Below are positions 41,607 to 64,000 of a DNA stretch of 64,000 nucleotides, one piece after another (position 1 is the first letter of the stretch; each line of letters starts with the position of its first letter). The DNA lies in the IMG/VR virus record IMGVR_UViG_3300030108_006260, positions 176,444-240,443 of that record; one strand, given 5' to 3'. The notes under the pieces are model-generated. The model made no database searches. It saw nothing but the letters and a program-made list of their open reading frames with translations, and was not told where the DNA came from. The translations under genes and the position numbers were made by a program.

Positions 41607-44600
41607 ATGTCTAGCATTAAACTAAATTACAACAAAATGAAGATCGCATCCCTACGCAGGGCAGCTGTAGGGGGTAGTAGTTTTGGATTTGGTAATGGTG
41701 GAGGATCCGGTGGTAGTGGCGGGTTCTCAGGTCCCTTCAGTTATGGTGGAGGAGGCGGAGGAGGAAGGAACTCCCACAATAGGTACAACCCTGTATACGA
41801 TGACCTTTCCGAGGGCACTATTATCGAGCAGTTCATGCCGGTGGACCCTCGTCGCCTGCATAGGATTTGGAGAAGAATTTATCTTCAGGACCCTGTTGCC
41901 GGTCCTGCTGTAGAGCTGTACAAAGACCTTCCTTGGTCTGACTTTGAACTCCTTGGTATTGATGACCCTGCTGTAGCGCGTTTATACACTGACGCAATGA
42001 ACGCAATCAATATCAATGACCTTTTGCCTGAACTCTCAGCGGAGTTTCTGACAATGGGAAAGGTTATTGGTCATCTTACAATGAATGAATCCAAAGGTCA
42101 TTGGGATCGATGTATTATACATGATCCTGATTGGATTCGAGTAACTCCTATTCCTATTCCTGGATTCCAGCCTAAGCTAGACATTATTGCTACTCCTGAA
42201 ATGAGAGCATGGTCCCACTCTAAAGATCCTAGAGACCTGCAAGCTCAAGAAGAAGTCGAAGAGCTGGTGGAAATGATTCGTAGGGGGTTGGACATTCCTC
42301 TTCCTACAGAGCAGACGTTCTACATTCCTAGGAGAACCTCCCCCTATGATGTGATAGGTGCATCTGCCTATACACGAATCATCATGTTCGTTGCTTATGA
42401 GAAGGCCCTCGTAAATGCAACAATCGCGGCTTCTAGAAGAAGAGCATCTCGTATACGCCACATCACGGCTGGAATCGACGACGTTTGGGAGCCAAGTCCG
42501 GACGAGATTAACGACCTATCCAACTTGTTCATGCAAGCGGACGAGGACCCTGTTGGAGCTATTGTTGTGACCAGAACGGGTGTCAATGTGAACGAAGTGG
42601 GAGGTAGCTCTCCACAAGACATTCTTAAGATCTCGGATGAGTGGCAGTTCCTTCTACAAGGTAAACTTAATGCTCTTGGTGTTAGCGAGGCGTTTCTTAC
42701 GGGTGAGGCTTGCCTTGTCGGTGACAGTCTAGTTCCGACCTCTAAAGGTCTTGTTGAAATTGGTAGTTTCCGCAGCAGAGAAGACGGACAGTGGCAGGAC
42801 CTATCTGAAGAAGTAAGTTCTAGGTACGGTAGTGCCCCCACGTCTAAATGGCTATACAACGGATACAGAGAAACCTTCAAGTTAGAGACAAAGTCAGGGC
42901 ACACACTTCAGAGTACTCCTAATCATCCTGTTCTTGTATTTGATCAAGAATCGGGAGTAGCTGATTGGAAGAGGACAGACGAATTGTCTCTGGGAGATTT
43001 GCTCTGCGTTTCAACCGCTAAGATGGTCAGGACGGAGCCTCTCCCCCTCAATTTGAGTCTACCCTCTGTTCGAAGTGCTTCCTGCAAAGTTCCTTCTACA
43101 CCCTCTCACATGAATGCAGACCTAGCCTACTTGCTGGGGTGTGTTGTTGCTGAGGGATCTTCCACTAAACATATGGTTAGTGTGAGCAACTCTTCTCAAG
43201 ACATACTGTTTAGGTATGAAAGATGCTGGTCATCCGTGTTTGGAATGACAGGGTCCCAATACCCAGTTAGTAAGGCTGGCGATACAGGTGTTATTAACGG
43301 AGTATCTTTTACCGTAAATAACGACTGTTACGACTACAGGGTACATAGCATCATTGCTAGCCAGTGGCTAGAGGACTTGGGCGCAGCTAACGTAAAGTCT
43401 AAGGATAAGAGAATTCCTTGGTCTGTGCTTCAAGCGGATGAGGAATCCCAACTGGCGTTTCTTGGCGCTTATTTGGATTGCGATGGATCTATACACCACA
43501 ACAAGGGTCAGATATCATTCCACTCAAGCAGTAAGAAGCTTCTACGTGACCTACAGGCCTTACTAAACTCACATGGTTACGTTTGTAGGCGTACTAAAAA
43601 GTCTGTAGAGCTTACCCGGAGGGACAGTAAGGACCTTTGGGAAAGTCTGAAAAAATACGTGGTAACTAAGTCTTACCCATCTGATGAGTCCCTCGCTACC
43701 AAATCCAGAAACAGGTTTGGCGTACCTAACAACTTCGTCAAGAAAATAATTTCGGAAAGAAAAATCAAGCACAATCGTCATGGATCTTACTTCCTTAACG
43801 ACGAAGGCAAAGAGATTCTCGTTCCTAGTGTAAGAAGCCCATTGAACGACGAGAAAAAGTTCCTTTACGACAGGTATTCCTCTGGTAACTACGATGAATG
43901 GCTTGATAACCTCAAGAAAATAAGCCCAAGTACCCACAAAAAACTTATAGGTCTCCTAGACCTTAGGTATGACTTTACTCCCATTGTATCGCTTTCTACG
44001 GGAGGTAAGCAGCATGTATATGATATTTCTATGGAAGAAGGACACGAGCCTGCTTTTGTAGCAAACGCGCTTGTCGTCCACAACACTTACAATACCATGG
44101 AACAGCTCATGTCTGTCTTCTTGGAGAAGATCAAGGCGTTCCGTAACTTCTTTGTCAACCAGCTTTTGCTTGAGAAAATCATTAAGCCACTAGCTGTTAA
44201 GCACCACTTCGTCCACCGACGACAAGCGGACCTGGACCACAATGTACGCACTGGTGGAAGAAAAGATCCTGAGTACATCATACCCTCTATTGTATGGGAA
44301 AAAAGTCTCCGTCCTGTAGCTGACCGTGACTATCTAGAAATCCTAGATATGATGGAAAGCAAGGGGATTCCTATCACTCTTCGCACGTGGGCAAGTGCTG
44401 CTGGCTTCGACGTCGAGGCCGAGACTGAGCAGTTTGTAGACGACATACGTGTTCGTCGAAAGATGGCAGACCAAAAGAAAAAGATCGTAGAGCAGGCTCC
44501 AGAGGCAGCGGGTGGATCTGGTGGTGGCGATGGACTCGGTGGCGACATGGGAGGACTAGGCGGTATAGGTGATGACCTAGGCGGCCTCGGTGGAGATCTT

Positions 44601-45320
44601 GGCGGCCTCGGTGGCGATATGGGTGGCATGGGAGACCTTGGCGGTGACATGGGAGGCATGGGCGGAGGCGGAGGAGATGACCTCGGCGGCCTCGAACTAC
44701 CTCAGGTAGGAGCATCCTTTAAGGAAGCACAAGCAAAGAGGTATGCTCAGGATCAAGAGTTCCTCACTAAACTACGTGCCCTACCTTTTTGGGGAAATAA
44801 GAAAGAACTCCTAGGTGTAACCTACGATAGAGCAGAGCTTACGGTACGTAGGATTCTAGATCACATGGGGACGCGAGAGGCTTCTGTCCTATCCACCCGT
44901 GAAGAAAGAAACATCTTAGGTACTAAGAACAAGGTTAGTACTGGCGCACTAAAATTTATTCTTAGTAGAATAGGTCTAGTCAAGAATGGGAGCTTGAACA
45001 AAGACACCGCTATAAAGATCCAAGAAGAACTATCTGCTCGTCTTGGTAGTCATCCTGGTGTACTTGCTAATGAACTTAGGCAAGTAGCTGTGTGCTTAGC
45101 CATGGGTAAGCGAGCTACTATGGAAAGATCCGCAGAAGACTACGAGGAAGAGGCGAGGAAAGCCATCGTAGAGGCAGACCAACGCCGCAGGAATCTAAAT
45201 GTAAACTCTGACCTCGTAAACGCCACAATGAAGATGGCGGGAAGTGCAATAAAGGGCGAATCTAACGGAAATCGTTTATTAACCGGTTATGTAGAGGACA
45301 GTAGCCTACTAAAGGAATAA
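41607..45320 (+). CDS. Portal protein (intein-containing)
   Basis: IYLQDPVAGPAVELY...ALGVSEAFLTGE[intein]TYN portal signature; lies between terL and protease; Gly/Asp-rich tail. Confidence 0.8.
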   Translation: MSSIKLNYNKMKIASLRRAAVGGSSFGFGNGGGSGGSGGFSGPFSYGGGGGGGRNSHNRYNPVYDDLSEGTIIEQFMPVDPRRLHRIWRRIYLQDPVAGPAVELYKDLPWSDFELLGIDDPAVARLYTDAMNAININDLLPELSAEFLTMGKVIGHLTMNESKGHWDRCIIHDPDWIRVTPIPIPGFQPKLDIIATPEMRAWSHSKDPRDLQAQEEVEELVEMIRRGLDIPLPTEQTFYIPRRTSPYDVIGASAYTRIIMFVAYEKALVNATIAASRRRASRIRHITAGIDDVWEPSPDEINDLSNLFMQADEDPVGAIVVTRTGVNVNEVGGSSPQDILKISDEWQFLLQGKLNALGVSEAFLTGEACLVGDSLVPTSKGLVEIGSFRSREDGQWQDLSEEVSSRYGSAPTSKWLYNGYRETFKLETKSGHTLQSTPNHPVLVFDQESGVADWKRTDELSLGDLLCVSTAKMVRTEPLPLNLSLPSVRSASCKVPSTPSHMNADLAYLLGCVVAEGSSTKHMVSVSNSSQDILFRYERCWSSVFGMTGSQYPVSKAGDTGVINGVSFTVNNDCYDYRVHSIIASQWLEDLGAANVKSKDKRIPWSVLQADEESQLAFLGAYLDCDGSIHHNKGQISFHSSSKKLLRDLQALLNSHGYVCRRTKKSVELTRRDSKDLWESLKKYVVTKSYPSDESLATKSRNRFGVPNNFVKKIISERKIKHNRHGSYFLNDEGKEILVPSVRSPLNDEKKFLYDRYSSGNYDEWLDNLKKISPSTHKKLIGLLDLRYDFTPIVSLSTGGKQHVYDISMEEGHEPAFVANALVVHNTYNTMEQLMSVFLEKIKAFRNFFVNQLLLEKIIKPLAVKHHFVHRRQADLDHNVRTGGRKDPEYIIPSIVWEKSLRPVADRDYLEILDMMESKGIPITLRTWASAAGFDVEAETEQFVDDIRVRRKMADQKKKIVEQAPEAAGGSGGGDGLGGDMGGLGGIGDDLGGLGGDLGGLGGDMGGMGDLGGDMGGMGGGGGDDLGGLELPQVGASFKEAQAKRYAQDQEFLTKLRALPFWGNKKELLGVTYDRAELTVRRILDHMGTREASVLSTREERNILGTKNKVSTGALKFILSRIGLVKNGSLNKDTAIKIQEELSARLGSHPGVLANELRQVAVCLAMGKRATMERSAEDYEEEARKAIVEADQRRRNLNVNSDLVNATMKMAGSAIKGESNGNRLLTGYVEDSSLLKE
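42711..44084 (+). mobile_element. Intein with LAGLIDADG homing endonuclease in portal (458 aa)
   Basis: CLVGDS start, TPNHPVL, LLGCVVAEG and FLGAYLDCDG, ends VVHN followed by Thr. Confidence 0.93.
44511..44694 (+). repeat. Low-complexity GG(D/L/M) coding repeat in portal tail
   Basis: GGDMGGLGGIGDDLGGLGGDLGG... Confidence 0.75.
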
Positions 45321-45326
45321 AACGGA

Positions 45327-46065
45327 ATGTTCAAAACTGGTGAAAACATCGGATCTTCTCGTGTTTTTGAGGNNNNNNNNNNAGACTTGTCAACAAGGAA
45401 GAGACTACAGAGGAAACCTAAAGGTTGCCTCTGATAACTTTCTAACTTCTAGTCGTGAAATTGACGTAAGTTGGCTTCCTGCTGCGGCCGAGAAGTACCA
45501 GATTTCTGGTAACATCAACGACTACATCATCAATGAGATTCCTATTGTAACAGTAGGTGTTCCTAACAGGAACCTAGATGAGTTCCCTTATGAAGAGGTA
45601 ACCTCGTTCAACGAAGAGATTGGTCGGATGGTTTACCAGACCTTCATTGGTAAGCCAACTCACATCGATCACGATAATAGGGACCCACGTAAGGCAAAGG
45701 GAGTCCACTTTGATGCACAGTTACAGAAGGTAGGCAACGTCTGGAAGATTGTCGTTCTTGCTGGATGGGACAAGACAAAAGACCCTGAACTAGCTCGTGC
45801 AATTCTAAACAGAACACGTACTGGGTTTTCCATGGGTGCCCTCGTTGGATACACTCAGTGTTCCTACCCTGGATGTGACGCAACTAGTCCGAACGGAAAG
45901 ATTGCATGCCGTCACCAGGACTACGGACGTGGGAAGGGTCGTGTATTAGAGTCGCATCTAGTATATGAAAGATGTTACCGCATAAATTATATTGAAACCA
46001 GCTCAGTAGCAGATCCAGCAGACCATACTGCCCACGATAGGTGGGTAAAGCCCTGGAATACTTGA
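45327..46065 (+). CDS. Prohead (capsid maturation) protease; 5' part crosses an assembly gap
   Basis: PNRNLDEF...YQTFIGKPTHIDHDN...AKG...GFSMG...ETSSVADPAD. Likely start ATG 45327 (MFKTGENIG); the frame change coincides with the N run. Confidence 0.7.
45373..45382. other. Assembly gap (10 N)
   Basis: Run of N. Confidence 1.
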
Positions 46066-50914: not shown

Positions 50915-51844
50915 ATGGCAAAGCAAGACGCAGCAGCCTTACGAGCAGCCCGACAGAAGCGAATCGCATCGCGGACAAAGGGCACACAGTCTAATCCCGC
51001 AACCAAGACCGCCGCACCCACCGAGAAAGCGCCTGCGACCGCTCCTTCGGTACTTACCGCAGCAGTTTTGGACCCTCAGTCCGTAACTAAGACTGCCGAA
51101 ATCGATCTCATCGGTTACGGCCAGGCCCAGGATCCTTTCTGGGTTGTCCTAGCTAACGGTCGTCCTGTAGCTGAGATTCGTCTCAGCGATCAGGAAGATC
51201 CCTCTGGGATCGCCAAGCTCTTCGTGGGAGAGCAGTACGCCGCAGGCGTACGTGAAGCTGCTAAGCAGTTTCCATTCTCTGAGGTTCTAGAAGGTGTTCG
51301 CGCCCGTCCCTACCAGGCATCGGTTGCCACGGATGACGCGTACCGCACCATCGAAGCCAAGCTTACCGAGAAGCACGATGTTGCTCTTCGTGAGGCAAAG
51401 GCAAACGTCAGAGACGACATGTCCAACATGTTGAACCTCGTAGTTCTTGCACAAAACAAGAACTTCCTCCGCGAGAATCCTCTCAAGGACGAGCTTTTCC
51501 GTCGCATGGCGTCGGCAGGCATCGAGGACAGCAGGGCAATCGCCCTTATTGAAGGAGCCTTCCAGGCCCGAGCACCTGAGCACTTCGAAATCTGCTTCAA
51601 GCAGGCTATGAAGTGGATGGATCTTACTCCTCAGGCTCTCGGTGAACTTGAGGAGCAGATTAAGGATCTCGGATACCGTCAGCCTGTTGCTGCCGCTTCT
51701 GATGAGATTCGTGCAGCTTCTGCTGCTGCCCCCTCAGGCTCTCATAACGTCCCTCTCTACACCCGTACCGCAGGTAGCAATGCTGCTTCCAGCGAGAAGG
51801 AAGACATGAGGGCTGCTATGGGATTTGGTCGCCGCCAAAACTAA
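50915..51844 (+). CDS. Putative capsid scaffold protein
   Basis: Ala-rich helical protein with strong codon bias, just upstream of decoration and capsid genes. Confidence 0.5.
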   Translation: MAKQDAAALRAARQKRIASRTKGTQSNPATKTAAPTEKAPATAPSVLTAAVLDPQSVTKTAEIDLIGYGQAQDPFWVVLANGRPVAEIRLSDQEDPSGIAKLFVGEQYAAGVREAAKQFPFSEVLEGVRARPYQASVATDDAYRTIEAKLTEKHDVALREAKANVRDDMSNMLNLVVLAQNKNFLRENPLKDELFRRMASAGIEDSRAIALIEGAFQARAPEHFEICFKQAMKWMDLTPQALGELEEQIKDLGYRQPVAAASDEIRAASAAAPSGSHNVPLYTRTAGSNAASSEKEDMRAAMGFGRRQN

Positions 51845-52593: not shown

Positions 52594-52649
52594 GCCGCAA
52601 TCGCGGCTTTTTGGGAATGGCCTCGCTTTATGCGGGGCTTTTCTCTTTT
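52594..52649 (+). terminator. Two tandem rho-independent terminators
   Basis: GCCGC-aatc-GCGGC-TTTTT and GCCTCGC-tttat-GCGGGGC-TTTTCTCTTTT. Confidence 0.75.
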
Positions 52650-54835: not shown

Positions 54836-55957
54836 ATGTCAAGCCCATACGCTTCTGGTCCCGGTGTTAAAGTAATTCGAGGAACCGATATTCCTGCTAC
54901 CTCGCAGGACGGTCTTCGCGGAGGAATCCGCACCGCTGGCCGCACCATGGTTTCTGATGGACCCGCTTTCGGATCTAACGGAGAAATCAACGCTTCTTCT
55001 AAGCGCGAACTCATGCAGTCGATTGGTCACGTTGTGCACCAGTCTCGTCAGAGTGTCATGACGCGCCAAGCTTCTGCTGAGGTTCAGCAGCAGCGCCTTG
55101 CAAGCCTTCGTGAGGCTTACGCCGACAAGAGCGGAACCAAGTTCCAGGTTCTTGGTGAGGTTATCTCCGAGGAAATCTGGGAGACCCTTGGTCGTGAAGG
55201 TTTTTCCCGTCGTCTCCTTTCCGTTATGCCCCTCGCTAAGGGACAGACCGGTCGAGTAAAGGTACGTCGTAAGGATGTTGTTGCTTATCAGGTCACCACT
55301 GACGTGAAGATCACCGAGCAGCGCATTCGTCAGCCCTACGTATATCCTCCCGAGTTCTACCTCGGTGCCCAGATCCTCATCGAGGACAAGGAAATCGAGC
55401 AGGCATCCACTGACCTCCTTGACGCTAAGTTCCAGGACGGTCTTGAGGCTATCCTTCGTCGTGAGGACCTTATCACCCGCGCTCTTATGACTCGTGCAGC
55501 AACGACGTTCAACGACCTCGTTCTCTTCACCACGTTCAACCCGAGCGTTCTTACAACCCTCCGTACCCAGGTCAACCGCTGGGGTACCCCGGCCGCTACC
55601 ATGGTCATCGCTTTCGACATCTGGGATGACATCATCGCAGACGCCGACTTCGTTGCATGGTGGGACCAGGTCCACAAGCATGAGTTGATCCTTGAGGGTC
55701 GTCTTGGTAGCATGCTCGGAATGGAAATCATCACGGATGGTTACCGCTACGACACCCTCCAGGTTCTTGAGCCTGGTGAGGTCTTCGTTACCGCTTCTCC
55801 TGTTACCGTTGGTTCCATCGTTCAGCGTAAGGAACTCGACAGCCGCGCAATCGACCAGTACAACCTTGGTCGTCCTGCTCGTGGTTGGTTCATGGAGCAG
55901 ATCCAGGGACAGGTGATCGTCAACGGCCGCGCCGTCGACCGTGGTATCCGTGTCTGA
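54836..55957 (+). CDS. Major capsid protein (HK97 fold)
   Basis: 373 aa, strong codon bias, REGFSRRLL, VYPPEF, EAILRRED, GRLGSMLGMEII, RGWFM; followed by a strong terminator. Confidence 0.85.
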   Translation: MSSPYASGPGVKVIRGTDIPATSQDGLRGGIRTAGRTMVSDGPAFGSNGEINASSKRELMQSIGHVVHQSRQSVMTRQASAEVQQQRLASLREAYADKSGTKFQVLGEVISEEIWETLGREGFSRRLLSVMPLAKGQTGRVKVRRKDVVAYQVTTDVKITEQRIRQPYVYPPEFYLGAQILIEDKEIEQASTDLLDAKFQDGLEAILRREDLITRALMTRAATTFNDLVLFTTFNPSVLTTLRTQVNRWGTPAATMVIAFDIWDDIIADADFVAWWDQVHKHELILEGRLGSMLGMEIITDGYRYDTLQVLEPGEVFVTASPVTVGSIVQRKELDSRAIDQYNLGRPARGWFMEQIQGQVIVNGRAVDRGIRV

Positions 55958-55980
55958 TAAGTAGACGCTCTTTTGAGTTG

Positions 55981-56013
55981 AAAAGGCCCAGGTCTCTTGA
56001 CTTGGGCCTTTTT
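55981..56013 (+). terminator. Rho-independent terminator after MCP
   Basis: AAAAGGCCCAGGTC-tctt-GACTTGGGCCTTTTT. Confidence 0.85.
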
Positions 56014-56025
56014 CAATTGTATAGT
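55997..56025 (+). promoter_or_regulatory. Sigma70-like promoter for endonuclease 3, overlapping the MCP terminator
   Basis: TTGACT-17-TATAGT, 9 bp before ATG 56035. Confidence 0.6.
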
Positions 56026-56034
56026 GACCTGTCG

Positions 56035-57549
56035 ATGACCAAGGTGTCTCAGGAGTATGTTCTTCGTAGACTCTCGGAAGGAGCATCGTTAACCCTCATT
56101 GCTCGTGAACTCAAAGTCAGCCCTTCTACCCTAAAAAGGAAGGTAGACTTACCCAAGCAGGGTACCTTAGAATGGTATCGTATCAAGTTTCCGGACGCTG
56201 GGGTCGAGTCAGTGGAAGAAGGGAAGCTGATCCTTTCTGAAGGACGGAGAGTGTCACCGGGTGAGCTACGTCAGGAGAGTTCTTTCATATCTAATAAGGA
56301 CCGTCTACTTCAGCGGTGGGCCCGTGGGGACAGTATTAGTACCATCGCTAAAGAGCTAAAGACTTCAAGGACTAGACTAGCGCCCCGTCTAGGAATACCT
56401 CCTATAGGTACAGTCGACTATTACTCTTTTCTGCTTTCACTTCTTACTTCCTCAATTAAGGTGAAGGAACTGATCCCTGGAGATGTGGTTCAACTCGAAT
56501 GCAGGGACGTGAAGAGGGGTGTACAATTCACAGCGCCTGCCTGGTGGGTTGTTTCTAGGTTACGTAAAGATCCTGACTACACTTTCTTTCCAAGCCAAGA
56601 CGAAAGAAAGAGCAAGATGATTGCAAACGGTACGATTTCTACGATCAGCGGGATGACACTGCCTGCCTACGCTGAACAGGTCGGGGCCTCCTACGCTACT
56701 GTACACAAGAGGCTGTCTTTAGTAGGGGAAGAGAACGCTATTCGTTCTTTTGACGGGTACTCCACCAGGGAAAGCACCCTAGAGTCTATGGTGTCCTCTT
56801 GGGTGGAGGACGTAGGCTGTTCTTTCGTGCGTAATAACAAGCTAGAGGGAACATCGTACCTCCCTGACCTCGTTGTGCATTCTAGGCGGCTGGTTATTGA
56901 ATGTGATGGTCTCTACTGGCACTCAGAAGCTCAAAAGGAAAAGAACTATCATCGAGACAAGAAGCTAACATACCAGAACCTTGGGTATAAATCAATCTTT
57001 CTTAGGGAAGATGAATTGCTCAAGTCGCCTGACATATGTCGAAGTATTATACTTAATCACCTAGGGTCTAACAGAAGGGTGTACGCTAGAAAGACCACTG
57101 TCTCCTCAGGGGGAAGAGATTTTATCTCGCAAAATCACTTGATGGGAAAGGGGAAGGGTACAACATGGTCCCTCATTTCAGGAGATGACATCGTTGCTGC
57201 TATGCAAGTTCGGTGGGTATCCAGAGATAAAGGTATACTTGACATCTCTAGGTTCTGTTCTTCTCCTGGTGTTACTGTGGTAGGGGGATTTTCTAAGCTG
57301 ATAAAGCATGTCACAGAAGAAATGAAGCCTAATTCTATACAGAATTTCATAGACCTGCGCTACGGGTCGGGCAGCTACCTGCGTGGGATGGGGTGGAAGT
57401 CTCACAGAACTTACCTATCATTCAGGTGGACAGACTGTAGAGGTAACACGTTCCATAGAATGAGGTACCCAGGTAAAACTGGATATGAACATGGTCTTTT
57501 GAAAATATGGGACTGTGGACAAGCCAAGTGGACTTTAGACCTGTCCTAG
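56035..57549 (+). CDS. Free-standing Hef-like homing endonuclease 3 (HTH + Vsr-like + GNAT/Mom-like)
   Basis: Two HTHs (SLTLIARELKVSPSTL; SISTIAKELKTS), YLPDLVV...IECDGLYWHS, RVYARKT...WDCGQAKW; likely start ATG 56035. Confidence 0.75.
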   Translation: MTKVSQEYVLRRLSEGASLTLIARELKVSPSTLKRKVDLPKQGTLEWYRIKFPDAGVESVEEGKLILSEGRRVSPGELRQESSFISNKDRLLQRWARGDSISTIAKELKTSRTRLAPRLGIPPIGTVDYYSFLLSLLTSSIKVKELIPGDVVQLECRDVKRGVQFTAPAWWVVSRLRKDPDYTFFPSQDERKSKMIANGTISTISGMTLPAYAEQVGASYATVHKRLSLVGEENAIRSFDGYSTRESTLESMVSSWVEDVGCSFVRNNKLEGTSYLPDLVVHSRRLVIECDGLYWHSEAQKEKNYHRDKKLTYQNLGYKSIFLREDELLKSPDICRSIILNHLGSNRRVYARKTTVSSGGRDFISQNHLMGKGKGTTWSLISGDDIVAAMQVRWVSRDKGILDISRFCSSPGVTVVGGFSKLIKHVTEEMKPNSIQNFIDLRYGSGSYLRGMGWKSHRTYLSFRWTDCRGNTFHRMRYPGKTGYEHGLLKIWDCGQAKWTLDLS

Positions 57550-57969: not shown

Positions 57970-58326
57970 ATGGAAAAAAGTATTGCAGAAAGACTGCGCC
58001 AGGTGTCCAAAAACATCGACAAACTGGCCCAAGTAAAAGAGATAGTGGAATCCAGCATAGGTCTTAGCCCCCAGGAGCAGATATGTGCCGCAGCATCTAT
58101 TGGCGCAGAGTATATTGCTGCTATGACAGGAAACCAGGATGAATCTGGGCTGATATATCGTGCTTACGAAGAAATACTCGCGTCACTATCACAGTCCCCC
58201 GCTATAGAAGAGATGCTACAGTGGAGCCGTGTTCCCCTTACTAAAGAAGCTTCATACAAAGAAGACCTTGATGATGCCTGGGTAGGGTTTAGGCTGGCTC
58301 TCCTTTCTGCTGGGAGGTCAAAATGA
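57970..58326 (+). CDS. Hypothetical protein (putative internal head protein)
   Basis: MEKSIAERLRQVS leader. Confidence 0.55.
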   Translation: MEKSIAERLRQVSKNIDKLAQVKEIVESSIGLSPQEQICAAASIGAEYIAAMTGNQDESGLIYRAYEEILASLSQSPAIEEMLQWSRVPLTKEASYKEDLDDAWVGFRLALLSAGRSK

Positions 58327-59042
58327 GTTTTTATAGCAGGATACTGGCTGTAGCAGGAATTAAATCAGCTGCTGCTAAGAAAAAGAAGACTACCAAGAAG
58401 TCGCCTAAGAAGACGCCTAAGAAGTCGCCTAAGAAGACTACCAAGAAAACAACTCCTTCTGTGGAGGATGCGTTTTACGCTCTACGCACCTGCTTGCACA
58501 GTGACCTTGGAAAAGGGACTGGATCGAGAGAGATGCGCCTCCTAGATCGTATAAAGTACGCTTTAGAGGTAGAGGGGTATAAGCTAACCACCTCTACTAA
58601 TGAACCAGGGTCAATGCCCAAGACACCTAGTAGACTAAGTTCTTCCACTCACTTTGTAGCTAGCGGTGGTATGTGTACTCTTATAAGAGGATCTGCTCCT
58701 GAGGGATTAGACATCAATGCTGTAGTATCTCTTTCCGACTTGTTTCGTAGTAAGCAGTGCTACAAGTGCACCATAGACCCATCTGATAACACTAACTCCA
58801 GGTCTCGTGGTGCAAACATGGCGCTTCCTAAGCCAGTTACCTGGCATAAGCTGCAAAAGTATGGGCTCTCTGTTGAGAATGTACTTGATGATGAGGGTAA
58901 AGTGCTACTAAAGAAGTACACTATCGAAGGAGTGAGTAGTTACACTGTAGATAGTCATACATTTTTTATGTCAAATAAAGAAAAGTTCCGCCGATGGATG
59001 GACGGACTTGATAGGTCAATCTCTAACTACCTAGAAAAGTAA
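58323..59042 (+). CDS. Protein with histone H1-like (S/T)PKK repeats
   Basis: KKKKTTKKSPKKTPKKSPKKTTKKTTP after leader YSRILAVAGIKSAA. Confidence 0.55.
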   Translation: MSFYSRILAVAGIKSAAAKKKKTTKKSPKKTPKKSPKKTTKKTTPSVEDAFYALRTCLHSDLGKGTGSREMRLLDRIKYALEVEGYKLTTSTNEPGSMPKTPSRLSSSTHFVASGGMCTLIRGSAPEGLDINAVVSLSDLFRSKQCYKCTIDPSDNTNSRSRGANMALPKPVTWHKLQKYGLSVENVLDDEGKVLLKKYTIEGVSSYTVDSHTFFMSNKEKFRRWMDGLDRSISNYLEK

Positions 59043-60436
59043 TGCTATCCTTCGTCAAAAAAGCAACTGTGCAGGATGCAGAGTCCGCAGCAAGGATTTA
59101 TTCCCAGTACCTTAATAGGGACGTAGACCTAAGCGTAGACTTTAATTCGATTCCTGTTAGTCTTTTGGATGCGCAGGCTGACGACGGAGTTTTGTACCTT
59201 AAGTTTTCTTGGCAAGCGGAAGATATAGGTAATGATTATAGAATTATTAGGAGTAAACTGGGTAAGGAAGTACGAGTACGCATAAACTCTGAAGAAATGG
59301 TAGGAGTCTTAGGTACAACAACGGAGATTCCTCCAGGTGCTGACATGGACACCTATAAAAATTCTCCATTTGTTCTGGCTATGACTTTTCCTTCTTCTAA
59401 GTTTGCTTCTTTTAAGGGCTCCATCATAGGAATCGACGTTCCCTCTAACATCCGGGACCTTCTTCCCATAGCAGATGACTTAGAGTACGATCCTCACATT
59501 ACAGTTGCCTTCTTCCCTAACCTAAGTACAGAAGATATACCTCTGGTACTCAGGGCAGCTAAAGAAGCCGCTAAGAAAGTTGGGTCCTTTTCTGTACGTG
59601 TTACCCAAAGCAAGACGTTTCCTACTCCTGACGAAGAAGGTAACTATCCTCATGTAGCTCTTATCGAAAGTGATGAGCTTAGATTTATGCATGAGGAGAT
59701 AGTACGCGTGCTAGAGCACTATTCTCCAGGATTAGTAAGTACTGATTTTGTTGGTAAGAACTACAATCCTCACATTACTCTTAAGTATTCTAAGAATCCA
59801 TCGTCTTACTCTCCCATTAAAGAGCTGAAGTGGAGCGTAGACTCTATGTTCCTGTCTTACAGAGGAGGGGACGAGTTTTTCCCTATACCCCTTAGTGGTG
59901 AAAAGTGTGCCTCAGGTGGGGGATCCATACAAGTAGGTGATGTGACGATTCCTGTCATGTCAGTAAATGACAACGACAACATAATATCTATAAATTTAGA
60001 GAGAGGCAAACACTCTGACTTAGTATCTACATGTGAGGGGCAACAAGTTACGTTGTCTACCCCCTCTTACAATAAAAAGATACAGATTTTAGAGGTTTCC
60101 GAAGAAGGTCCCGATCGCTTCTCTTTATCTTATCGTCCCTTAGTTACTTATATGTCAAAAAAGTCACGGTACCTACTCATAAAGGTGTCTAACCTCCTTG
60201 AGTTGAGAGGGTTTACCGCTTTATCTAAGCGTGTGGCTTCACTTTTAGACTTTTCTCCTGAGGAATCTGAATCAGAGGGGACTGAAGAGGAAGAACCAGA
60301 AGACGTAGACGCCCTAGGACCGGGCTTTCCCGGAACTGACCCCCGCATCGTAACTTATGTTAAGGCTCCACAGACTACTCAAACTATTGACGAGCCAAAG
60401 TTCCCTATGACCTTACCCCTGCACGAGAGAATTTAG
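59042..60436 (+). CDS. Multidomain protein with central 2H phosphoesterase (2'-5' RNA ligase / Acb1-like) domain
   Basis: Two HxT motifs: DPHITVAF and NPHITLKY. Confidence 0.8.
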   Translation: MLSFVKKATVQDAESAARIYSQYLNRDVDLSVDFNSIPVSLLDAQADDGVLYLKFSWQAEDIGNDYRIIRSKLGKEVRVRINSEEMVGVLGTTTEIPPGADMDTYKNSPFVLAMTFPSSKFASFKGSIIGIDVPSNIRDLLPIADDLEYDPHITVAFFPNLSTEDIPLVLRAAKEAAKKVGSFSVRVTQSKTFPTPDEEGNYPHVALIESDELRFMHEEIVRVLEHYSPGLVSTDFVGKNYNPHITLKYSKNPSSYSPIKELKWSVDSMFLSYRGGDEFFPIPLSGEKCASGGGSIQVGDVTIPVMSVNDNDNIISINLERGKHSDLVSTCEGQQVTLSTPSYNKKIQILEVSEEGPDRFSLSYRPLVTYMSKKSRYLLIKVSNLLELRGFTALSKRVASLLDFSPEESESEGTEEEEPEDVDALGPGFPGTDPRIVTYVKAPQTTQTIDEPKFPMTLPLHERI

Positions 60437-60439
60437 CAA

Positions 60440-61279
60440 ATGGATAAAGAAATCAAGAAGATGTACACGGCATCCGCCCGTCTACAGCGTGTCGTGTACA
60501 ACGACTTTATGGAAAAGACAGCGAATCCCGCAATTATGGGTATAGCACGTGCTTTGCTTCCAGCACTCAAGTCACTTGGTCCTCAGGTCCTGAAGCTTGT
60601 TGCTAAAGTACCTCCTGCTGCGTGGGCTAACATCATTCCTACTATAGTACGTGGCATAGCTCCTAAGGAAAACCCTGCTGGGGTAACCGCTTCTTCGTCC
60701 AGCAAGGAGGCATTTGGTCCTGCCGCTGGTCTTGCCATGCGTATGCTTGCACCTGCTGCACTGGACATGGTTATGGGTGACGATGACGAGCCAGAGGATA
60801 TGGATGCATCTTCTGAAAATGAAGAGGACATGGACGAGGATAAAGAAGGTATTGCTCCTCTTGCTGGTCTAGCCCTCAGTACGCTCGCTCCCATGGCTCT
60901 AGACTCTCTTATGGGAGACGATGACGAAGCCACTACAGCTTCTAAGAACGATGAAAACGACGAAGATGAGGATGAGGACAAGGAGGGCTTAGGGCCCTTG
61001 GCTGGACTGGCACTCAGTACTCTTGCTCCTATGGCTATTGACTCCATCATGGGAGACGACGATGAGGCTACAACAGCTTCCGCACACTGTGAGGTAATCG
61101 AAACTGTCCTCAAGAAGCACAAGGTTGCTCATGCAGAAATTGTGGCCAAGTCTCTTTACCTTGCGGCCCTTGAGACCAGAAATTCCCATAAAAAGAAGCC
61201 ACGTAAGGCTGTAGCAGAGGCAGTCAAGCTCGTGCAACGGATGCAGGACGAGCTTGAGGCACTCAGGGCTTACCTATAA
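60440..61279 (+). CDS. Repeat protein: amphipathic/hydrophobic peptides separated by acidic spacers
   Basis: Three PxAGLA...LAP.A.D..MGDDDE units plus one cationic amphipathic segment. Confidence 0.65.
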   Translation: MDKEIKKMYTASARLQRVVYNDFMEKTANPAIMGIARALLPALKSLGPQVLKLVAKVPPAAWANIIPTIVRGIAPKENPAGVTASSSSKEAFGPAAGLAMRMLAPAALDMVMGDDDEPEDMDASSENEEDMDEDKEGIAPLAGLALSTLAPMALDSLMGDDDEATTASKNDENDEDEDEDKEGLGPLAGLALSTLAPMAIDSIMGDDDEATTASAHCEVIETVLKKHKVAHAEIVAKSLYLAALETRNSHKKKPRKAVAEAVKLVQRMQDELEALRAYL

Positions 61280-62100
61280 TGGATCCGCTTTCTCTAGAAC
61301 AGCAGAAACAGGCAATTTCGTCTGCTTCTAAGACTCTTTTATGGGAAATTCTAGAGGAAGAAGGCGCTTGGCTTAAGGTTCTGGGGGTTCTTCCTAGGGA
61401 ATACTTCGACTCTTTTCTCTCTGCTCTTAGGAGAGCAGGAGTTACAGGAGAGAATACGAACAAAGTTCGAGCACATGCATCTATGTTCGTAAAGAACAAG
61501 GTAAGCCTTCCTCACTTGCAGGCTGCCCTTGTGCAGGCATGGAATCCTTCCGACCTTAAAGACTCTGCTTCTTGGTTGAAAGAGAAGGGATTTTTGTCTA
61601 CTCCTCTGTCTCCTCTTACTGTAGATGACAAAAAGGAGATAGTAAAGTCCGCAAGTTCTGTTCCCTCTGCTACAAAAGAGAGAATGCTCCGTCAGGCAGG
61701 AGGTAAAAAACCAAGATCAAACCACCCTCCTGACGGTGCTTCTTTAGAGGGCCGTAAACTGTGGAACAGAGTCCTGAGGAATCCTGGTAGAAGAAAAATC
61801 ATTTTTGGCCCCAAGTCTCTGAGTGACCAGTGGTCTCTCGCTACTAAGTTTTGGCTAAAAGAATGTGCAGATCAGGGTGTTGCCCCCTATAAATCGGACG
61901 CGGAATCTAGCTCTAAGTCCATGCACGCTCAGAATGTCATAAGTAGAGCTATGCAAGAGCTACATGGGGGTCTATGTTACGATGGGTACTCTATGAGCCG
62001 TCCTGCGGCTCGCGCCTATAAGAAGCTATGGCGCCAGCTAGAACGAGATGGTGTTTCGTTAGGAAGTTGGACCTCTATAAAGCCTAAGAGAAAAATCTAA
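61279..62100 (+). CDS. Hypothetical protein
   Basis: 273-aa ORF with 1-bp overlaps to neighbours. Confidence 0.6.
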   Translation: MDPLSLEQQKQAISSASKTLLWEILEEEGAWLKVLGVLPREYFDSFLSALRRAGVTGENTNKVRAHASMFVKNKVSLPHLQAALVQAWNPSDLKDSASWLKEKGFLSTPLSPLTVDDKKEIVKSASSVPSATKERMLRQAGGKKPRSNHPPDGASLEGRKLWNRVLRNPGRRKIIFGPKSLSDQWSLATKFWLKECADQGVAPYKSDAESSSKSMHAQNVISRAMQELHGGLCYDGYSMSRPAARAYKKLWRQLERDGVSLGSWTSIKPKRKI

Positions 62101-63575
62101 TGAGTATTTACGACGAGACAGAAAGTTACTCTATACACCTACAGAAGGTGGCGCACATGGTATTGTCGTCACCTGACATTAAGGTTGCTACACTTTCCAA
62201 GTTAGTGGGTGAAGCAGGTCTATTTGATAGGGAGCTAGCTTCCATACTTACGGTCCTTTACTCTCACAATAACTTAAGTGGAAGAGGCATGCCTGAGGCT
62301 AGCAAGCCCATTGTCCTTTTAAAGAGGATTGCAGAAGACCTACAGGACCGTGGATTCTATTTTCCATCGTTTTCTCGTAGGCTCAAGCACATCGAATCCG
62401 CTACAAATGGGTCTTTCGAGAGAAAAGAAGGGTCCCAGTACGGAGGCGGTGAGTCTCAAGCGCTAGACAGGCCCCTACGGTCTCTTAGAGAAAAGCTCTA
62501 CGAGGTTAGGCTCCATGATGCTGGGCACGCCAAAGATGAGGGTGGTAAGGACATAACAAAACGTACCGGAGAAGAGACTCTATCCATGGTGGAGAAGCTC
62601 ATAGGGGCTATTAAGACCTTAGAGACAGAGGGGTCTCCTTATGGAGTGAGTGATAGTTCGGACAGAGCTAACTCCCGTCGAAATGAATTCTTGGACAAGA
62701 GGTTCGATGAGTTCGGACAGAAGCTGAACTTCTCGGTAGGGTCTACCGCAGAGGGACAGAAGATAGAAATGTATCACCTGCACCCTGTCCACACCGAAGA
62801 TTTTGGAGAACGTACCTACGCAATATCCGAAGACAACTATGCCCTACTTGTTTCGGTTATGAGGAAAGCAGTTCCTGACTGGTCACCTTCCGAATCCTAC
62901 GCGTATGTGGACAATATTATTCCTCCTATCTATCCCTCTAAAGATAGGGGCAGATCTATCGAGTCACCCGACAGATCTACACAGAAGCAAAGAGAGCAAG
63001 AAGCGCAAAAAGAGAGGGACTTACTAACGTCTATCTCTCAGAAGGGTGAATACGATCAGTCTGTAGTCCGTACTATAAGGCTTCCCTTCGCTCCTGACCA
63101 GATAGACGACAACTTCCCCAGCCTGGAGCTTGACTCCGACACTTATATCGGACAAAACGTATCTAAGGTTGTTGTCGAAAGTATAAACCGGATGAGATTT
63201 TCGGGGTTCGTAGACTTTGATCAAGACTATCGAATGATGATAATGTGGGCGAACGCACCAAGTGACGATCACAAAGACGTCATGGGAAAAACATATAGAG
63301 ATTTACTAGAAAAAGTATTGAAGGCGTACTCTTCTAAGTTTGGTGACCTACTCAAGGTAAAGCCCGAGGTTAGGAAGATAAAAAGGGGTGCAGCCCTTTA
63401 CTTCCCCAAGCCCATAAGCCTACATGTTTTGGTAAAATCGTTCACTCCACTTCAAAACCTCCTAAACCAGACGAACGCAAGTATTGAGAACGCGGAAATA
63501 GCTCGTGGCCTTGAGAGGTCTTTCAACAGGGAGATCAACGATGATGAGCTTCCTGGACACATGGAGAATTCCTGA
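62100..63575 (+). CDS. Hypothetical protein (putative internal head protein)
   Basis: 491-aa ORF; HLQKVAH / IKVAT leader. Confidence 0.6.
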   Translation: MSIYDETESYSIHLQKVAHMVLSSPDIKVATLSKLVGEAGLFDRELASILTVLYSHNNLSGRGMPEASKPIVLLKRIAEDLQDRGFYFPSFSRRLKHIESATNGSFERKEGSQYGGGESQALDRPLRSLREKLYEVRLHDAGHAKDEGGKDITKRTGEETLSMVEKLIGAIKTLETEGSPYGVSDSSDRANSRRNEFLDKRFDEFGQKLNFSVGSTAEGQKIEMYHLHPVHTEDFGERTYAISEDNYALLVSVMRKAVPDWSPSESYAYVDNIIPPIYPSKDRGRSIESPDRSTQKQREQEAQKERDLLTSISQKGEYDQSVVRTIRLPFAPDQIDDNFPSLELDSDTYIGQNVSKVVVESINRMRFSGFVDFDQDYRMMIMWANAPSDDHKDVMGKTYRDLLEKVLKAYSSKFGDLLKVKPEVRKIKRGAALYFPKPISLHVLVKSFTPLQNLLNQTNASIENAEIARGLERSFNREINDDELPGHMENS

Positions 63576-64000
63576 TGAGTCAAGGTTACATACAATGTTA
63601 CAGACAGCAGGGGTTCATCTCTATAAGTGTAGTTGCTCTAGATAATGACGGTGTTCCTGTAGTTCCTGACTCTGACCCGTTAGCAGAGCTTTTCCGAATT
63701 GACCCAAACACTGGTACAGCTGCAAAGGACCTGAACATAAACGGACTGACGGGAGAAATAAGCCTGCCACTAGTTGCTGGCTCTTCTTTTCTCTATAGTG
63801 GGGCTCTAGATTTATCAGAGGCTCTATTCGAGCACTATGAAATAACAGTAACCTATTCCTATAATTCTGGAGCAGACACGGCAGTCCATCATATTAGGTT
63901 GTTTATATCAAACATAGACCAGATTCTTTACGAGAGTAGAAACGTAACTGTTGCATCCGTAGGAACTACCTTTAAAGCACCAACACCTGACATTCCATAA
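63575..64000 (+). CDS. Ig-like virion structural protein
   Basis: LDNDGVPVVPDSDP resembles the neck protein N-terminus (EEDGTPLLPSDP); beta-rich; stop at 63998-64000. Confidence 0.45.
   Translation: MSQGYIQCYRQQGFISISVVALDNDGVPVVPDSDPLAELFRIDPNTGTAAKDLNINGLTGEISLPLVAGSSFLYSGALDLSEALFEHYEITVTYSYNSGADTAVHHIRLFISNIDQILYESRNVTVASVGTTFKAPTPDIP

What the first reader, a model, noticed from the sequence alone, without database searches (positions are those of the whole stretch)
59408..59911. Acb1-like 2H phosphodiesterase bracketed exactly by K-x-A-S sites
Seen: the 2H domain (HITV...HITL) starts right after KFAS and ends at KCAS, inside a 464-aa protein that also has KKAT, KRVAS and a leader-like helix. 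Known: T4 Acb1 is a 2H enzyme that degrades CBASS cyclic nucleotides; other 2H enzymes act on RNA 2',3'-cyclic phosphates or 2-5A. Inference: the prohead protease excises a free anti-defence nuclease that is injected with the genome and acts before phage gene expression.
Basis: partly seen in the sequence, partly recalled or inferred. Interest (0 to 1): 0.75.

Follow-up and report, generated by a model that had tools for sequence, protein, structure and literature searches.

The report
Head-operon 2H phosphoesterase in marine megaphage
A giant marine phage encodes, in its head-gene operon, a three-domain protein whose middle domain is an intact 2H phosphoesterase; that domain is flanked by two flexible linkers carrying a short motif that recurs in the phage's head proteins, so the head protease may cut the enzyme free for delivery with the DNA, but this is unproven.

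Summary
ORF 59042-60436 (464 aa) has a 2H phosphoesterase domain with both H-x-T motifs. KFAS (res 120-123) and KCAS (288-291) lie exactly in the two low-confidence linkers of an AlphaFold model.

K-x-A-S is not enriched genome-wide. [KR]-x-A-S is enriched about 4-fold in the head module (17 seen, 4.2 expected), and about 2.7-fold in six related phages. It sits at conserved places in the major capsid protein, portal, protease and scaffold-like proteins. It is therefore a credible maturation-protease motif.

- The domain is nearer LigT/ThpR-type RNA 2',3'-cyclic phosphodiesterases (Z 15-16) than Acb1 (Z 9.4; Pfam Acb1 below cut-off).
- Orthologues keep only a loose form of the linker motifs.
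- The "leader helix" and KRVAS lie in folded parts.
- Packaging and injection rest only on context: a core, translationally coupled gene three genes after the major capsid gene in every relative examined.

Delivery of 2H domains by virions was already predicted for polyvalent phage proteins. I read this as a new variant of a known kind, of moderate interest, with the substrate unknown.

The parts
59042..60436 (+). Whole gene: 464-aa protein built as N barrel, 2H domain, second barrel, helical hairpin and conserved C-terminal peptide
   Evidence: ORF list. 22 full-length homologues of 37-50% identity. AF2 model with mean pLDDT 78.
59042..59398 (+). N-terminal split beta-barrel domain (res 1-119); helix 13-23 packs on it
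   Evidence: AF2 pLDDT 88 when folded alone. Only weak fold matches, Z 5-7.3, to tail-tube/Hcp/Dit and PilZ/YcgR-N barrels. No sequence family found.
59399..59410 (+). KFAS (res 120-123) in linker 1
   Evidence: Position. pLDDT below 50 at 118-124. The aligned column keeps Ala in most of the 23 family members, followed by S/G/A/D/E; K/R at -3 in only 7 of 23.
59414..59896 (+). 2H phosphoesterase domain (res 125-285)
   Evidence: Pfam PF13563 and PF02834 above cut-off. VIA Z 16.4 to D. radiodurans RNA 2',3'-cyclic phosphodiesterase and 15.2 to P. horikoshii LigT. Foldseek E 1e-6 to the rotavirus VP3 phosphodiesterase.
59495..59506 (+). First catalytic H-x-T motif, HITV (res 152-155)
   Evidence: P151, H152, I153, T154 and V155 are invariant in 23 sequences.
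59771..59782 (+). Second catalytic H-x-T motif, HITL (res 244-247)
   Evidence: P243 and H244 are invariant; T246 and L247 are at least 90% conserved.
59903..59914 (+). KCAS (res 288-291) in linker 2
   Evidence: Position. pLDDT below 50 at 286-292. Homologues show [KR]-x-A in 11 of 22, and [KR]-E-G or [KR]-V-E-A in most others.
59918..60250 (+). Second split beta-barrel plus helical hairpin (res 293-403)
   Evidence: AF2. It draws the same weak fold matches as the N domain, Z 6-7.3. The beta part is replaced in divergent family members.
60227..60241 (+). KRVAS (res 396-400), inside helix 392-402; unlikely to be a cleavage site
   Evidence: AF2 secondary structure, with pLDDT about 86 for that block. 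Not conserved in the alignment.
60311..60433 (+). Most conserved part of the family: C-terminal peptide (res 424-464) after an acidic disordered linker
   Evidence: Invariant G426, P427, G431, I436, K441, Q444 and R463. Kept even in divergent members that lack the second barrel. Single copy in the genome. Partner unknown: the complex prediction gave no answer.
45340..46065 (+). Head maturation protease, with KVAS at res 28-31 (nt 45421-45432)
   Evidence: phrog_18299, E 1.6e-55. [KR]-[VI]-A-S is conserved in 4 of 4 orthologues.
54836..55957 (+). Major capsid protein. Two candidate maturation sites: G-E-I-N-A-S (res 49-54, nt 54980-54997) and R-Q-A-S (res 77-80, nt 55064-55075)
   Evidence: phrog_2522. 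G-E-x-N is invariant, followed by A/V then S/G/A, across PaBG, Lu11, RSL1, BcepSauron, GR11A and Sen-NF. [KR]-x-A-S near res 79 is present in most clade members examined.
41607..45320 (+). Portal protein (with intein); KIAS at res 12-15 (nt 41640-41651)
   Evidence: phrog_16240. Intein. [KR]-x-A-S at res 12 in 3 of 3 orthologues.
50915..51844 (+). Scaffold-like 309-aa protein; RIAS at res 16-19 and RAAS at res 266-269
   Evidence: Weak match to the C-terminal part of PaBG gp082. N-terminal [KR]-x-A-S and C-terminal T-R-[ST]-A-S are conserved in orthologues.
57970..64000 (+). Tightly packed late operon holding the gene: products of 118, 239, 464, 279, 273, 491 and 141+ aa, with starts overlapping the preceding stops by 1-4 nt
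   Evidence: ORF coordinates. No convincing + strand terminator inside the operon. The same gene order occurs in 7 related contigs.

Best explanation
The gene encodes a core, late, head-module protein of a clade of uncultured marine megaphages.

Shown:
- A catalytically intact 2H phosphoesterase of the LigT/ThpR type is inserted between two small split beta-barrels.
- These are followed by a helical hairpin, an acidic disordered stretch and a very conserved C-terminal peptide.

Inferred:
- The protein is built into the prohead, with the barrels and/or the C-terminal peptide serving as the anchor.
- The assemblin-type head protease of this clade cuts head proteins at [KR]-x-A|S.
- In this phage it cuts both linkers (KFA|S, KCA|S) and frees a 168-residue enzyme, S123-A290.
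- The enzyme leaves the capsid with the DNA. Before any phage gene is expressed, it hydrolyses a 2',3'-cyclic-phosphate, 2'-5'-linked or cyclic-oligonucleotide product of a host defence.
- Which substrate it acts on is unknown. The fold argues first for RNA or nucleotide 2',3'-cyclic phosphates, or 2-5A-like molecules, rather than Acb1-type substrates.
For: 2H identity and intact active site.

Domain boundaries coincide with the motifs.

Head-module context:
- Portal, protease, scaffold-like and capsid genes lie upstream.
- The operon is translationally coupled.
- The position is identical in L002, L004/5 and L014-L017.
- The gene is present in all 6 MCP-anchored loci with enough flank.

A late structural operon is a poor place for an enzyme meant to act early, unless the enzyme is packaged. 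This argument rests on the precedents of T4 Alt and the internal proteins, cited from my own knowledge.

Processing motif:
- [KR].AS is 17 observed against 4.2 expected in the head module, with controls flat.
- The conditional test gives P 1.8e-4 in the head module and no signal in the rest of the genome.
- In six relatives the count is 58 observed against 21.5 expected.
- The motif is conserved at the N-terminal regions of portal, protease, scaffold-like protein and MCP while the flanks vary.

Precedent for the idea: 2H domains fused to MuF or portal modules in injected polyvalent proteins were predicted to counter nucleotide signalling (PMC5512222). BFVD fold matches include 2H domains inside actinophage capsid-morphogenesis and structural proteins.
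Against: - There is no proteomic or biochemical datum. No cultured relative carries the protein: tblastn against 50,697 phage records found nothing.
- The orthologues P0014 and P0017 have no [KR]-x-A-S in either linker. K/R at -3 is present in only 7 of 23 (linker 1) and 11 of 22 (linker 2) family members.
- The widely conserved MCP motif G-E-x-N-A-[SG] does not recur in this protein.
- The motif was chosen post hoc, and in an unbiased scan R.AS ranks only 6th of 8,000.
- The related loci share ancestry, so they are not independent replicates.
- The C-terminal peptide is not shared with any other protein of the genome, so it is not a common packaging tag.
- The complex prediction with MCP and the scaffold-like protein gave no answer.
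- The gene is core and syntenic, unlike most accessory anti-defence genes.
Confidence: 0.4

Rival explanations
1. The protein is an uncut structural ring component of the neck or tail channel. The two barrels would be tail-tube/Hcp-like domains forming a pseudo-hexameric trimer, as in hub proteins that carry an inserted domain. The 2H domain would be displayed in or near the DNA channel, and the protein would work intact.
For: Both barrels draw the same top fold matches among tail-tube, Dit, Hcp and baseplate-hub chains: Z 5-7.3, for about 30 of the 50 best rows for the N domain. The gene is core and syntenic in the structural module. Linker motifs are not conserved literally.
Against: All barrel matches are below Z 8, which the tool itself calls the range of common arrangements. 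PilZ/YcgR-N and flavin-reductase barrels score as well. The gene lies three genes after the capsid gene, not among recognisable tail genes. No sheath or tube gene was identified nearby.
Confidence: 0.2
2. The protein is a cytoplasmic RNA end-healing enzyme. Made late, the 2H domain would open 2',3'-cyclic phosphate ends left by host anticodon nucleases or other metal-independent RNases, so that the phage's RNA ligases can reseal the RNA. It would be neither packaged nor processed.
For: The nearest relatives by sequence and fold are LigT/ThpR and RNA 2',3'-cyclic phosphodiesterases. The genome holds two RNA_ligase (PF09414) genes.
Against: The ligase genes lie about 157 kb and 228 kb away, not linked to this gene. 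No RtcB was found. The gene is embedded in the head operon and flanked by two non-enzymatic barrels and a conserved terminal peptide. [quoted passage not shown]
Confidence: 0.2
3. The protein is an Acb1-type anti-CBASS nuclease. The freed domain would cleave 3'3'-cGAMP, cA3 and related CBASS signals.
For: A sub-threshold Pfam Acb1 match occurs in 21 of 23 family members, best E 4.2e-6. Acb1 (7t26/7t27) appears among the fold matches. ESM-Atlas neighbours mix PF13563 and Acb1 labels.
Against: Acb1 scores 19.8-24 bits, below the 27-bit cut-off. Acb1 ranks 50th in Foldseek, and 18th in VIA (Z 9.4), behind LigT/CPDase (Z 15-16), VP3, AKAP18 and ns2. No Acb1 chain appears in the profile search of PDB sequences.
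Confidence: 0.1
4. The two K-x-A-S in this protein are linker composition, not protease sites. Small and basic residues are common in flexible linkers, and the head-module enrichment would come from other proteins.
For: The literal motif is absent from the linkers of most orthologues. K.AS is at expectation genome-wide. Two K.AS in 464 aa has only P 0.013 before any correction. Some conserved [KR]-P-A-S sites in neighbouring proteins lie in conserved, probably folded, regions.
Against: Both copies fall in the only two internal disordered segments, 14 of 464 residues. Ala at the same linker column is kept across the family. The same tetrapeptide is conserved at the N-terminal regions of classical protease substrates.
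Confidence: 0.3

Closest known systems
LigT/ThpR and RNA 2',3'-cyclic phosphodiesterases (2H superfamily; PDB 5h7f, 4qak, 1vgj/1vdx, 2d4g)
   Same: Two H-x-T motifs and the same fold (Z 14.8-16.4; 27% identity to P. horikoshii LigT). Pfam LigT_PEase and 2_5_RNA_ligase2 score above cut-off.
   Different: Those are stand-alone cellular enzymes of about 170-185 aa. Here the domain is inserted between two barrels in a phage head-operon protein.
Viral 2',5'-phosphodiesterases: rotavirus VP3 C-terminal domain and coronavirus ns2
   Same: A compact 2H fold (Foldseek TM 0.73 normalised to the target, E 1e-6; VIA Z 13.1-13.7). As I recall, VP3 is itself a virion-packaged multidomain protein whose phosphodiesterase destroys a host immune nucleotide.
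   Different: They belong to eukaryotic RNA viruses and act on 2-5A of the OAS-RNase L pathway. Identity is only 19-22%. No proteolytic release is involved.
Phage Acb1 (T4 gp57B family, PF23474; PDB 7t26/7t27)
   Same: A phage 2H enzyme with H-x-T motifs that counters defence by degrading a nucleotide signal.
   Different: Below the Pfam cut-off, with Z only 9.4. Acb1 is a small free protein and, as far as I recall, is not encoded in a structural operon.
2H domains in phage polyvalent proteins fused to MuF or portal modules (Iyer et al. 2017, PMC5512222)
   Same: A 2H domain carried by a head-associated protein, predicted to be injected with the DNA and to act as an RNase or to degrade defence nucleotides, with processing into separate units. 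BFVD fold matches to such actinophage proteins.
   Different: No MuF or portal domain and no second effector domain is present here. The carrier domains (two barrels plus a C-terminal peptide) are unrelated. The host clade is a marine megaphage.
T4 internal proteins and Alt: packaged, trimmed by the prohead protease gp21, injected (my own knowledge)
   Same: The proposed logic is the same: a late gene, capsid targeting, cleavage at a short protease motif, and action at the start of the next infection.
   Different: T4 removes a short N-terminal targeting peptide at L/I-x-E. Here an internal domain would be cut out on both sides at [KR]-x-A|S. Nothing here has been shown experimentally.
Herpesvirus assemblin cleavage sites, (V/L/I)-x-A|S (my own knowledge; Welch et al. 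1991 is reference 56 of PMC5512222)
   Same: Phage head proteases share the assemblin fold. The candidate sites here also have Ala at P1 and Ser at P1'. The MCP motif E-I-N-A-S resembles maturational sites of the V-N-A|S type.
   Different: P3 is basic here rather than aliphatic. The scissile bond is assumed, not mapped. The fold of this protease was not tested (no Pfam or PDB sequence match).

Membership tests
2H phosphoesterase superfamily | Two H-x-T/S motifs on the two lobes | tested here: met
   HITV at 152-155 and HITL at 244-247. H152, T154 and H244 are invariant and T246 is at least 90% conserved in 23 sequences.
2H phosphoesterase superfamily | Profile match above the curated cut-off | tested here: met
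   PF13563 at 41.7 bits (cut-off 27) and PF02834 at 37.3 bits (cut-off 23.3). All 23 members match both families.
2H phosphoesterase superfamily | 2H fold | tested here: met
   VIA Z 16.4 (5h7f), 15.4 (4qak) and 15.2 (1vgj) over residues 125-290. 47 Foldseek PDB matches with E up to 1e-3, the listed ones being 2H-fold entries.
Acb1 (anti-CBASS 2H nuclease, PF23474) | Profile match above the gathering score | tested here: not met
   19.8 bits for the whole protein and 24.0 bits for the domain alone, against a cut-off of 27.
Acb1 (anti-CBASS 2H nuclease, PF23474) | Acb1 is the nearest solved structure | tested here: not met
   7t27 scores Z 9.4 at rank 18, and 7t26 is Foldseek rank 50. LigT/CPDase, Usb1, VP3, AKAP18 and ns2 all score higher.
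Acb1 (anti-CBASS 2H nuclease, PF23474) | Hydrolysis of 3'3'-cGAMP, cA3 and other CBASS signals | not testable with these tools
   Needs an enzyme assay.
Substrates of the phage head maturation protease | A protease gene in the same head module | tested here: met
   45340-46065, phrog_18299, E 1.6e-55.
Substrates of the phage head maturation protease | A short motif shared with the capsid, scaffold, portal and protease proteins, located in accessible regions | tested here: inconclusive
   [KR]-x-A-S is enriched in the head module and conserved in MCP, portal, protease and scaffold-like proteins. Two copies lie in disordered linkers here. The motif is not kept in most orthologues of this protein.
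Substrates of the phage head maturation protease | Observed cleavage products in virions | not testable with these tools
   The phage is uncultured and no proteome is available.
Polyvalent proteins (Iyer et al. 2017) | Several effector domains in one polypeptide, typically with a MuF or portal module or an own peptidase | tested here: not met
   2H is the only enzymatic domain. No MuF, portal or peptidase domain was found by Pfam or PHROGs. The flanking domains are barrels without a family.
PilZ / YcgR-type cyclic-di-GMP receptors (considered for the two barrels) | PilZ fold with the RxxxR and D/NxSxxG binding motifs | tested here: inconclusive
   Fold matches are only Z 5-6.5 and TM 0.4-0.57. 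I saw no RxxxR or DxSxxG motif in the family consensus. There is no Pfam PilZ hit.

The most novel reading that the evidence does not exclude
A clade of marine megaphages loads its capsid with a LigT-type 2H phosphodiesterase. An assemblin-like protease with [KR]-x-A|S specificity cuts the enzyme out of a carrier protein on both sides, and it is then injected to destroy a host defence nucleotide or cyclic-phosphate RNA end before phage transcription starts. This would be the first case of an internally excised, capsid-delivered nucleotide-degrading counter-defence enzyme. The flanking PilZ-like barrels could even bind the same nucleotides.
Probability: 0.2. Interest if true: 0.75.

Novelty: new variant of a known kind. 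Interest (0 to 1): 0.55.

Why it matters
Nucleotide-signalling defences (CBASS, type III CRISPR, Thoeris, Pycsar) and RNA-cutting defences act within minutes of infection. An enzyme that arrives with the DNA would beat them without waiting for gene expression.

Virion delivery of 2H domains has been predicted from domain architectures, but I found no report that demonstrates it. This family offers a compact, testable case in an abundant marine phage lineage: the gene occurs in more than ten marine metagenome runs.

The comparative derivation of a [KR]-x-A-S head-protein motif also gives a concrete, checkable prediction of the maturation protease's specificity in a group of giant phages for which no proteomics exists.

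Tried and rejected
- **DNA and protein searches of 50,697 phage records** with the gene found no match, so no cultured relative with a virion proteome is available.
- **PaBG comparison.** Only the MCP, the virion structural protein and the scaffold-like C-terminal part are shared. The genes downstream of the MCP have no BLAST match.
- **PHROGs on ten downstream genes of L002** gave nothing, so the neck and tail genes could not be placed.
- **Shared packaging tag.** The C-terminal peptide, N barrel and second barrel are single-copy in the genome.
- **Modular carrier idea.** A profile of the second barrel plus tail against 1.84 billion representatives found 18 proteins. All of the full-length hits that were scanned with Pfam carry the 2H domain, except one spurious repeat protein, P0035. 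The carrier was not seen with other cargo.
- **Duplication test.** Profile-profile comparison of the N and second barrels gave no sequence relation. Only the fold matches coincide.
- **MCP-type motif.** E-x-N-A-[SG] was searched in the genome and does not occur in the other head proteins.
- **Complex prediction.** The run with window-clade alignments gave no answer, neither for nor against.
- **ESM-Atlas look-ups** for the two barrels and the 491-aa neighbour gave only weak leads.
- **Region-limited word search** with the N domain found only the protein itself.
- **Literature.** Nothing was found on protease specificity in PaBG/RSL1-type phages, nor on the BCSR5 phosphodiesterase structure 9q2y.
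Full report
**What is there.** The window is the last 64 kb of a 240-kb IMG/VR virus record estimated 62% complete. Related contigs reach 392 and 424 kb. The gene occurs in more than ten marine metagenome runs, so this is an uncultured marine megaphage.

The window carries a head module:
- terminase and portal, each with a LAGLIDADG intein;
- a head maturation protease at 45340-46065 (phrog_18299);
- helical and scaffold-like proteins;
- a virion structural protein;
- the major capsid protein (MCP) at 54836-55957, about 33% identical to the MCPs of PaBG, Lu11, phiRSL1 and BcepSauron.

After a homing-endonuclease insertion, a tightly packed operon begins at 57970. In it most starts overlap the preceding stop by 1-4 nt. 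The finding is its third gene, 59042-60436.

**The observation.** All motifs are at the stated residues, and the finding's span equals S123-A290. Pfam places residues 150-276 in the 2H superfamily above cut-off.

An AlphaFold2 model built on 23 sequences has three confident domains, 9-117, 125-285 and 293-403, and a disordered tail. Its only internal low-confidence segments are 118-124 and 286-292, and these contain KFAS and KCAS. Cutting between Ala and Ser at both sites would release the complete 2H fold. By contrast, helix 13-23 is part of the N domain and KRVAS lies inside helix 392-402. The "leader" and the third site are therefore not supported.

**Is K-x-A-S more than chance?**
- Genome-wide it is not: 35 seen, 28 expected.
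- I then took the head module alone, with homing endonucleases and the portal intein removed (5,041 aa). There [KR].AS occurs 17 times against 4.2 expected from per-protein shuffles, and 0 of 1000 shuffles reach that count. This is 3.4 per 1000 aa, against 0.73 per 1000 aa in the rest of the genome.
- K.AS (8 seen, 2.1 expected) and R.AS (9 seen, 2.1 expected) are each enriched on their own. The permuted motifs K.SA, S.AK and SA.K, and E.AS and D.AS, are at expectation.
- Conditional on the A-S dipeptide, 33% of head-module copies have K/R at -3 against 12.9% expected (P 1.8e-4). The rest of the genome shows 10.6% against 11.0% expected.
- In an unbiased scan of 8,000 gapped triplets, R.AS ranks 6th. 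The signal is real but not overwhelming.
- In six related loci, the head-side genes give 58 seen against 21.5 expected, and five of the six loci are individually at P 0.02 or below. These loci share ancestry, so they are not independent replicates.

The motif is kept at the same places while the flanks change:
- portal residue 12 (3 of 3 orthologues);
- protease residues 28-31 (4 of 4);
- the N-terminal region and the C-terminal T-R-[ST]-A-S of the scaffold-like protein;
- MCP near residue 79;
- the 118-aa protein near residue 90 (5 of 5).

That distribution is the usual signature of a maturation-protease site. Separately, the MCP N-terminal region holds G-E-x-N, followed by A/V then S/G/A, invariant from this clade out to PaBG, RSL1 and Sen-NF. 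Both candidate sites have Ala-Ser at the putative scissile bond. This recalls the (V/L/I)-x-A|S specificity of herpesvirus assemblin, the fold shared by phage head proteases (my own knowledge). The scissile bond here is assumed, not mapped.

**How far does this apply to the 2H protein?** In the 22 homologues the literal motif is not conserved.
- Linker 1 keeps an Ala followed by S/G/A/D/E in most of the 23 sequences, with K/R at -3 in only 7.
- Linker 2 has [KR]-x-A in 11 of 22, and [KR]-E-G or [KR]-V-E-A in most others.
- The orthologues in the two best-covered relatives have no [KR]-x-A-S in either linker.

Excision is thus plausible in this phage. As a family trait it needs either a looser specificity or is not conserved.

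**What kind of 2H enzyme?**
- The family profile hits P. horikoshii and P. furiosus LigT-like proteins and the D. radiodurans RNA 2',3'-cyclic phosphodiesterase, but no Acb1 chain.
- VIA-align gives Z 16.4, 15.4, 15.2 and 14.8 for CPDase/LigT/YjcG, 13.8 for Usb1, 13.1-13.7 for rotavirus VP3 and MHV ns2, 9.9 for a phage BCSR5 phosphodiesterase, and 9.4 for Acb1.
- Foldseek ranks the compact VP3 phosphodiesterase first and Acb1 50th.
- Pfam Acb1 stays below its cut-off in all members.

"Acb1-like" is therefore not the best label. The domain is a LigT/ThpR-type 2H phosphoesterase of unknown substrate, with all catalytic residues under conservation.

**The flanking parts.**
- The N domain and the second domain have no sequence family and no detectable mutual sequence similarity.
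- Both draw the same weak fold matches, Z 5-7.3: tail-tube/Hcp/Dit/hub barrels, flavin-reductase split barrels and PilZ/YcgR-N barrels. That is a lead, not an assignment.
- The most conserved part of the whole family is the last 41 residues. It is kept even in divergent members that replace the second barrel or add 260-300 residues.
- This peptide is unique in the genome. Its partner is unknown, because the one complex prediction gave no answer.

**Context.**
- The gene order MCP, 88, 118, about 225, 2H protein, 160-280, about 275, 490-620 aa is the same in seven related contigs.
- Every MCP-anchored IMG/VR locus with enough flank has the gene. It is a core gene of the structural module.
- The MCP is 84-87% identical between these phages, while this protein is 40-43% identical. 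Its neighbours diverge as fast.
- Two RNA-ligase genes exist but lie about 157 kb and 228 kb away.

**Mechanism and rivals.** My best reading, at 0.4, has four parts:
- The protein is a capsid-internal carrier of a 2H enzyme.
- In this phage the head protease frees that enzyme.
- The enzyme is delivered with the DNA.
- It then removes a cyclic-phosphate, 2'-5' or cyclic-oligonucleotide product of host defence.

Shown are the enzyme class, the domain boundaries, the head-operon position and the motif statistics. Inferred are packaging, cleavage, injection and substrate.

The rivals are:
- an uncut neck or tail-channel ring protein (0.2);
- a late cytoplasmic RNA-healing enzyme (0.2);
- the specific Acb1/CBASS reading (0.1);
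- the view that the two sites in this protein are merely linker composition (0.3).

**Comparison with what is known.** Iyer et al. (PMC5512222) described 2H domains fused to MuF or portal modules in phage polyvalent proteins. They proposed injection with the DNA, processing into separate units, and action as RNases or against defence nucleotides. The same group noted 2H enzymes in jumbo phages (PMC7824862). A preprint reports that an ejected virion protein inhibits a CBASS effector (10.1101/2025.07.23.666291).

The present protein lacks MuF, portal and peptidase modules. It uses an unrelated carrier and belongs to an undescribed marine clade. I rate it a new variant of a known kind, with interest 0.55.

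Noticed in passing
window 37456-40752 and 41607-45320: The terminase large subunit (1098 aa) and the portal (1237 aa) each carry an intein with a LAGLIDADG homing endonuclease. In the portal it spans about residues 369-827.
   Followed up: partly
window 46175-48412 (+), 52648-54174 (-), 55885-57549 (+): Three paralogous free-standing homing endonucleases (phrog_3339/559, DUF559/DUF7487) are inserted in the head module. One sits directly after the MCP stop, and its longest ORF overlaps the MCP 3' end. Relatives have them at different places or lack them (L016, L017, L014).
   Followed up: partly
window 60440-61279: The 279-aa product next to the 2H gene holds about three tandem copies of a hydrophobic segment, each ending in a D/E-rich run followed by T-A-S. 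Orthologues in L002 and L004 are 163 aa and lack the repeats.
   Followed up: no
window 58323-59042: The 239-aa product just upstream is translationally coupled to the 2H gene. It has a 12-residue N-terminal peptide ending in V-A|G (V-L-A|A or V-L-A|G in relatives), then a lysine-rich K/T/S/P tract like a histone tail, then a Cys-containing conserved domain. It may be an internal DNA-binding head protein.
   Followed up: partly
window 54980-54997 (MCP res 49-54): G-E-x-N followed by A/V then S/G/A is invariant in the otherwise variable N-terminal region of MCPs, from this clade to PaBG, Lu11, phiRSL1, BcepSauron, Vibrio GR11A and Salmonella Sen-NF. It is probably the ancestral maturation cleavage site of this MCP family.
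   Followed up: partly
window 45374-45383: A run of 10 N (masked or unresolved bases) lies inside the 5' part of the protease gene.
   Followed up: no
L022:13989-15436: In one related IMG/VR contig the 2H-protein gene is split over three reading frames. This is either assembly error or a decaying copy.
   Followed up: no
window 22572-29180: A 2202-aa protein has many tail-fibre-like repeats, including an exactly repeated segment at residues about 506 and 1094.
   Followed up: no
P0008 (homologue), linker 1: One homologue carries a 40-residue Cys-rich insertion exactly at linker 1. This shows that the linker tolerates large insertions.
   Followed up: no
G000:C1:7833-8276 and 78099-78632 (outside the window): Two RNA_ligase (PF09414) genes are present in the same phage genome. 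No RtcB was found.
   Followed up: partly
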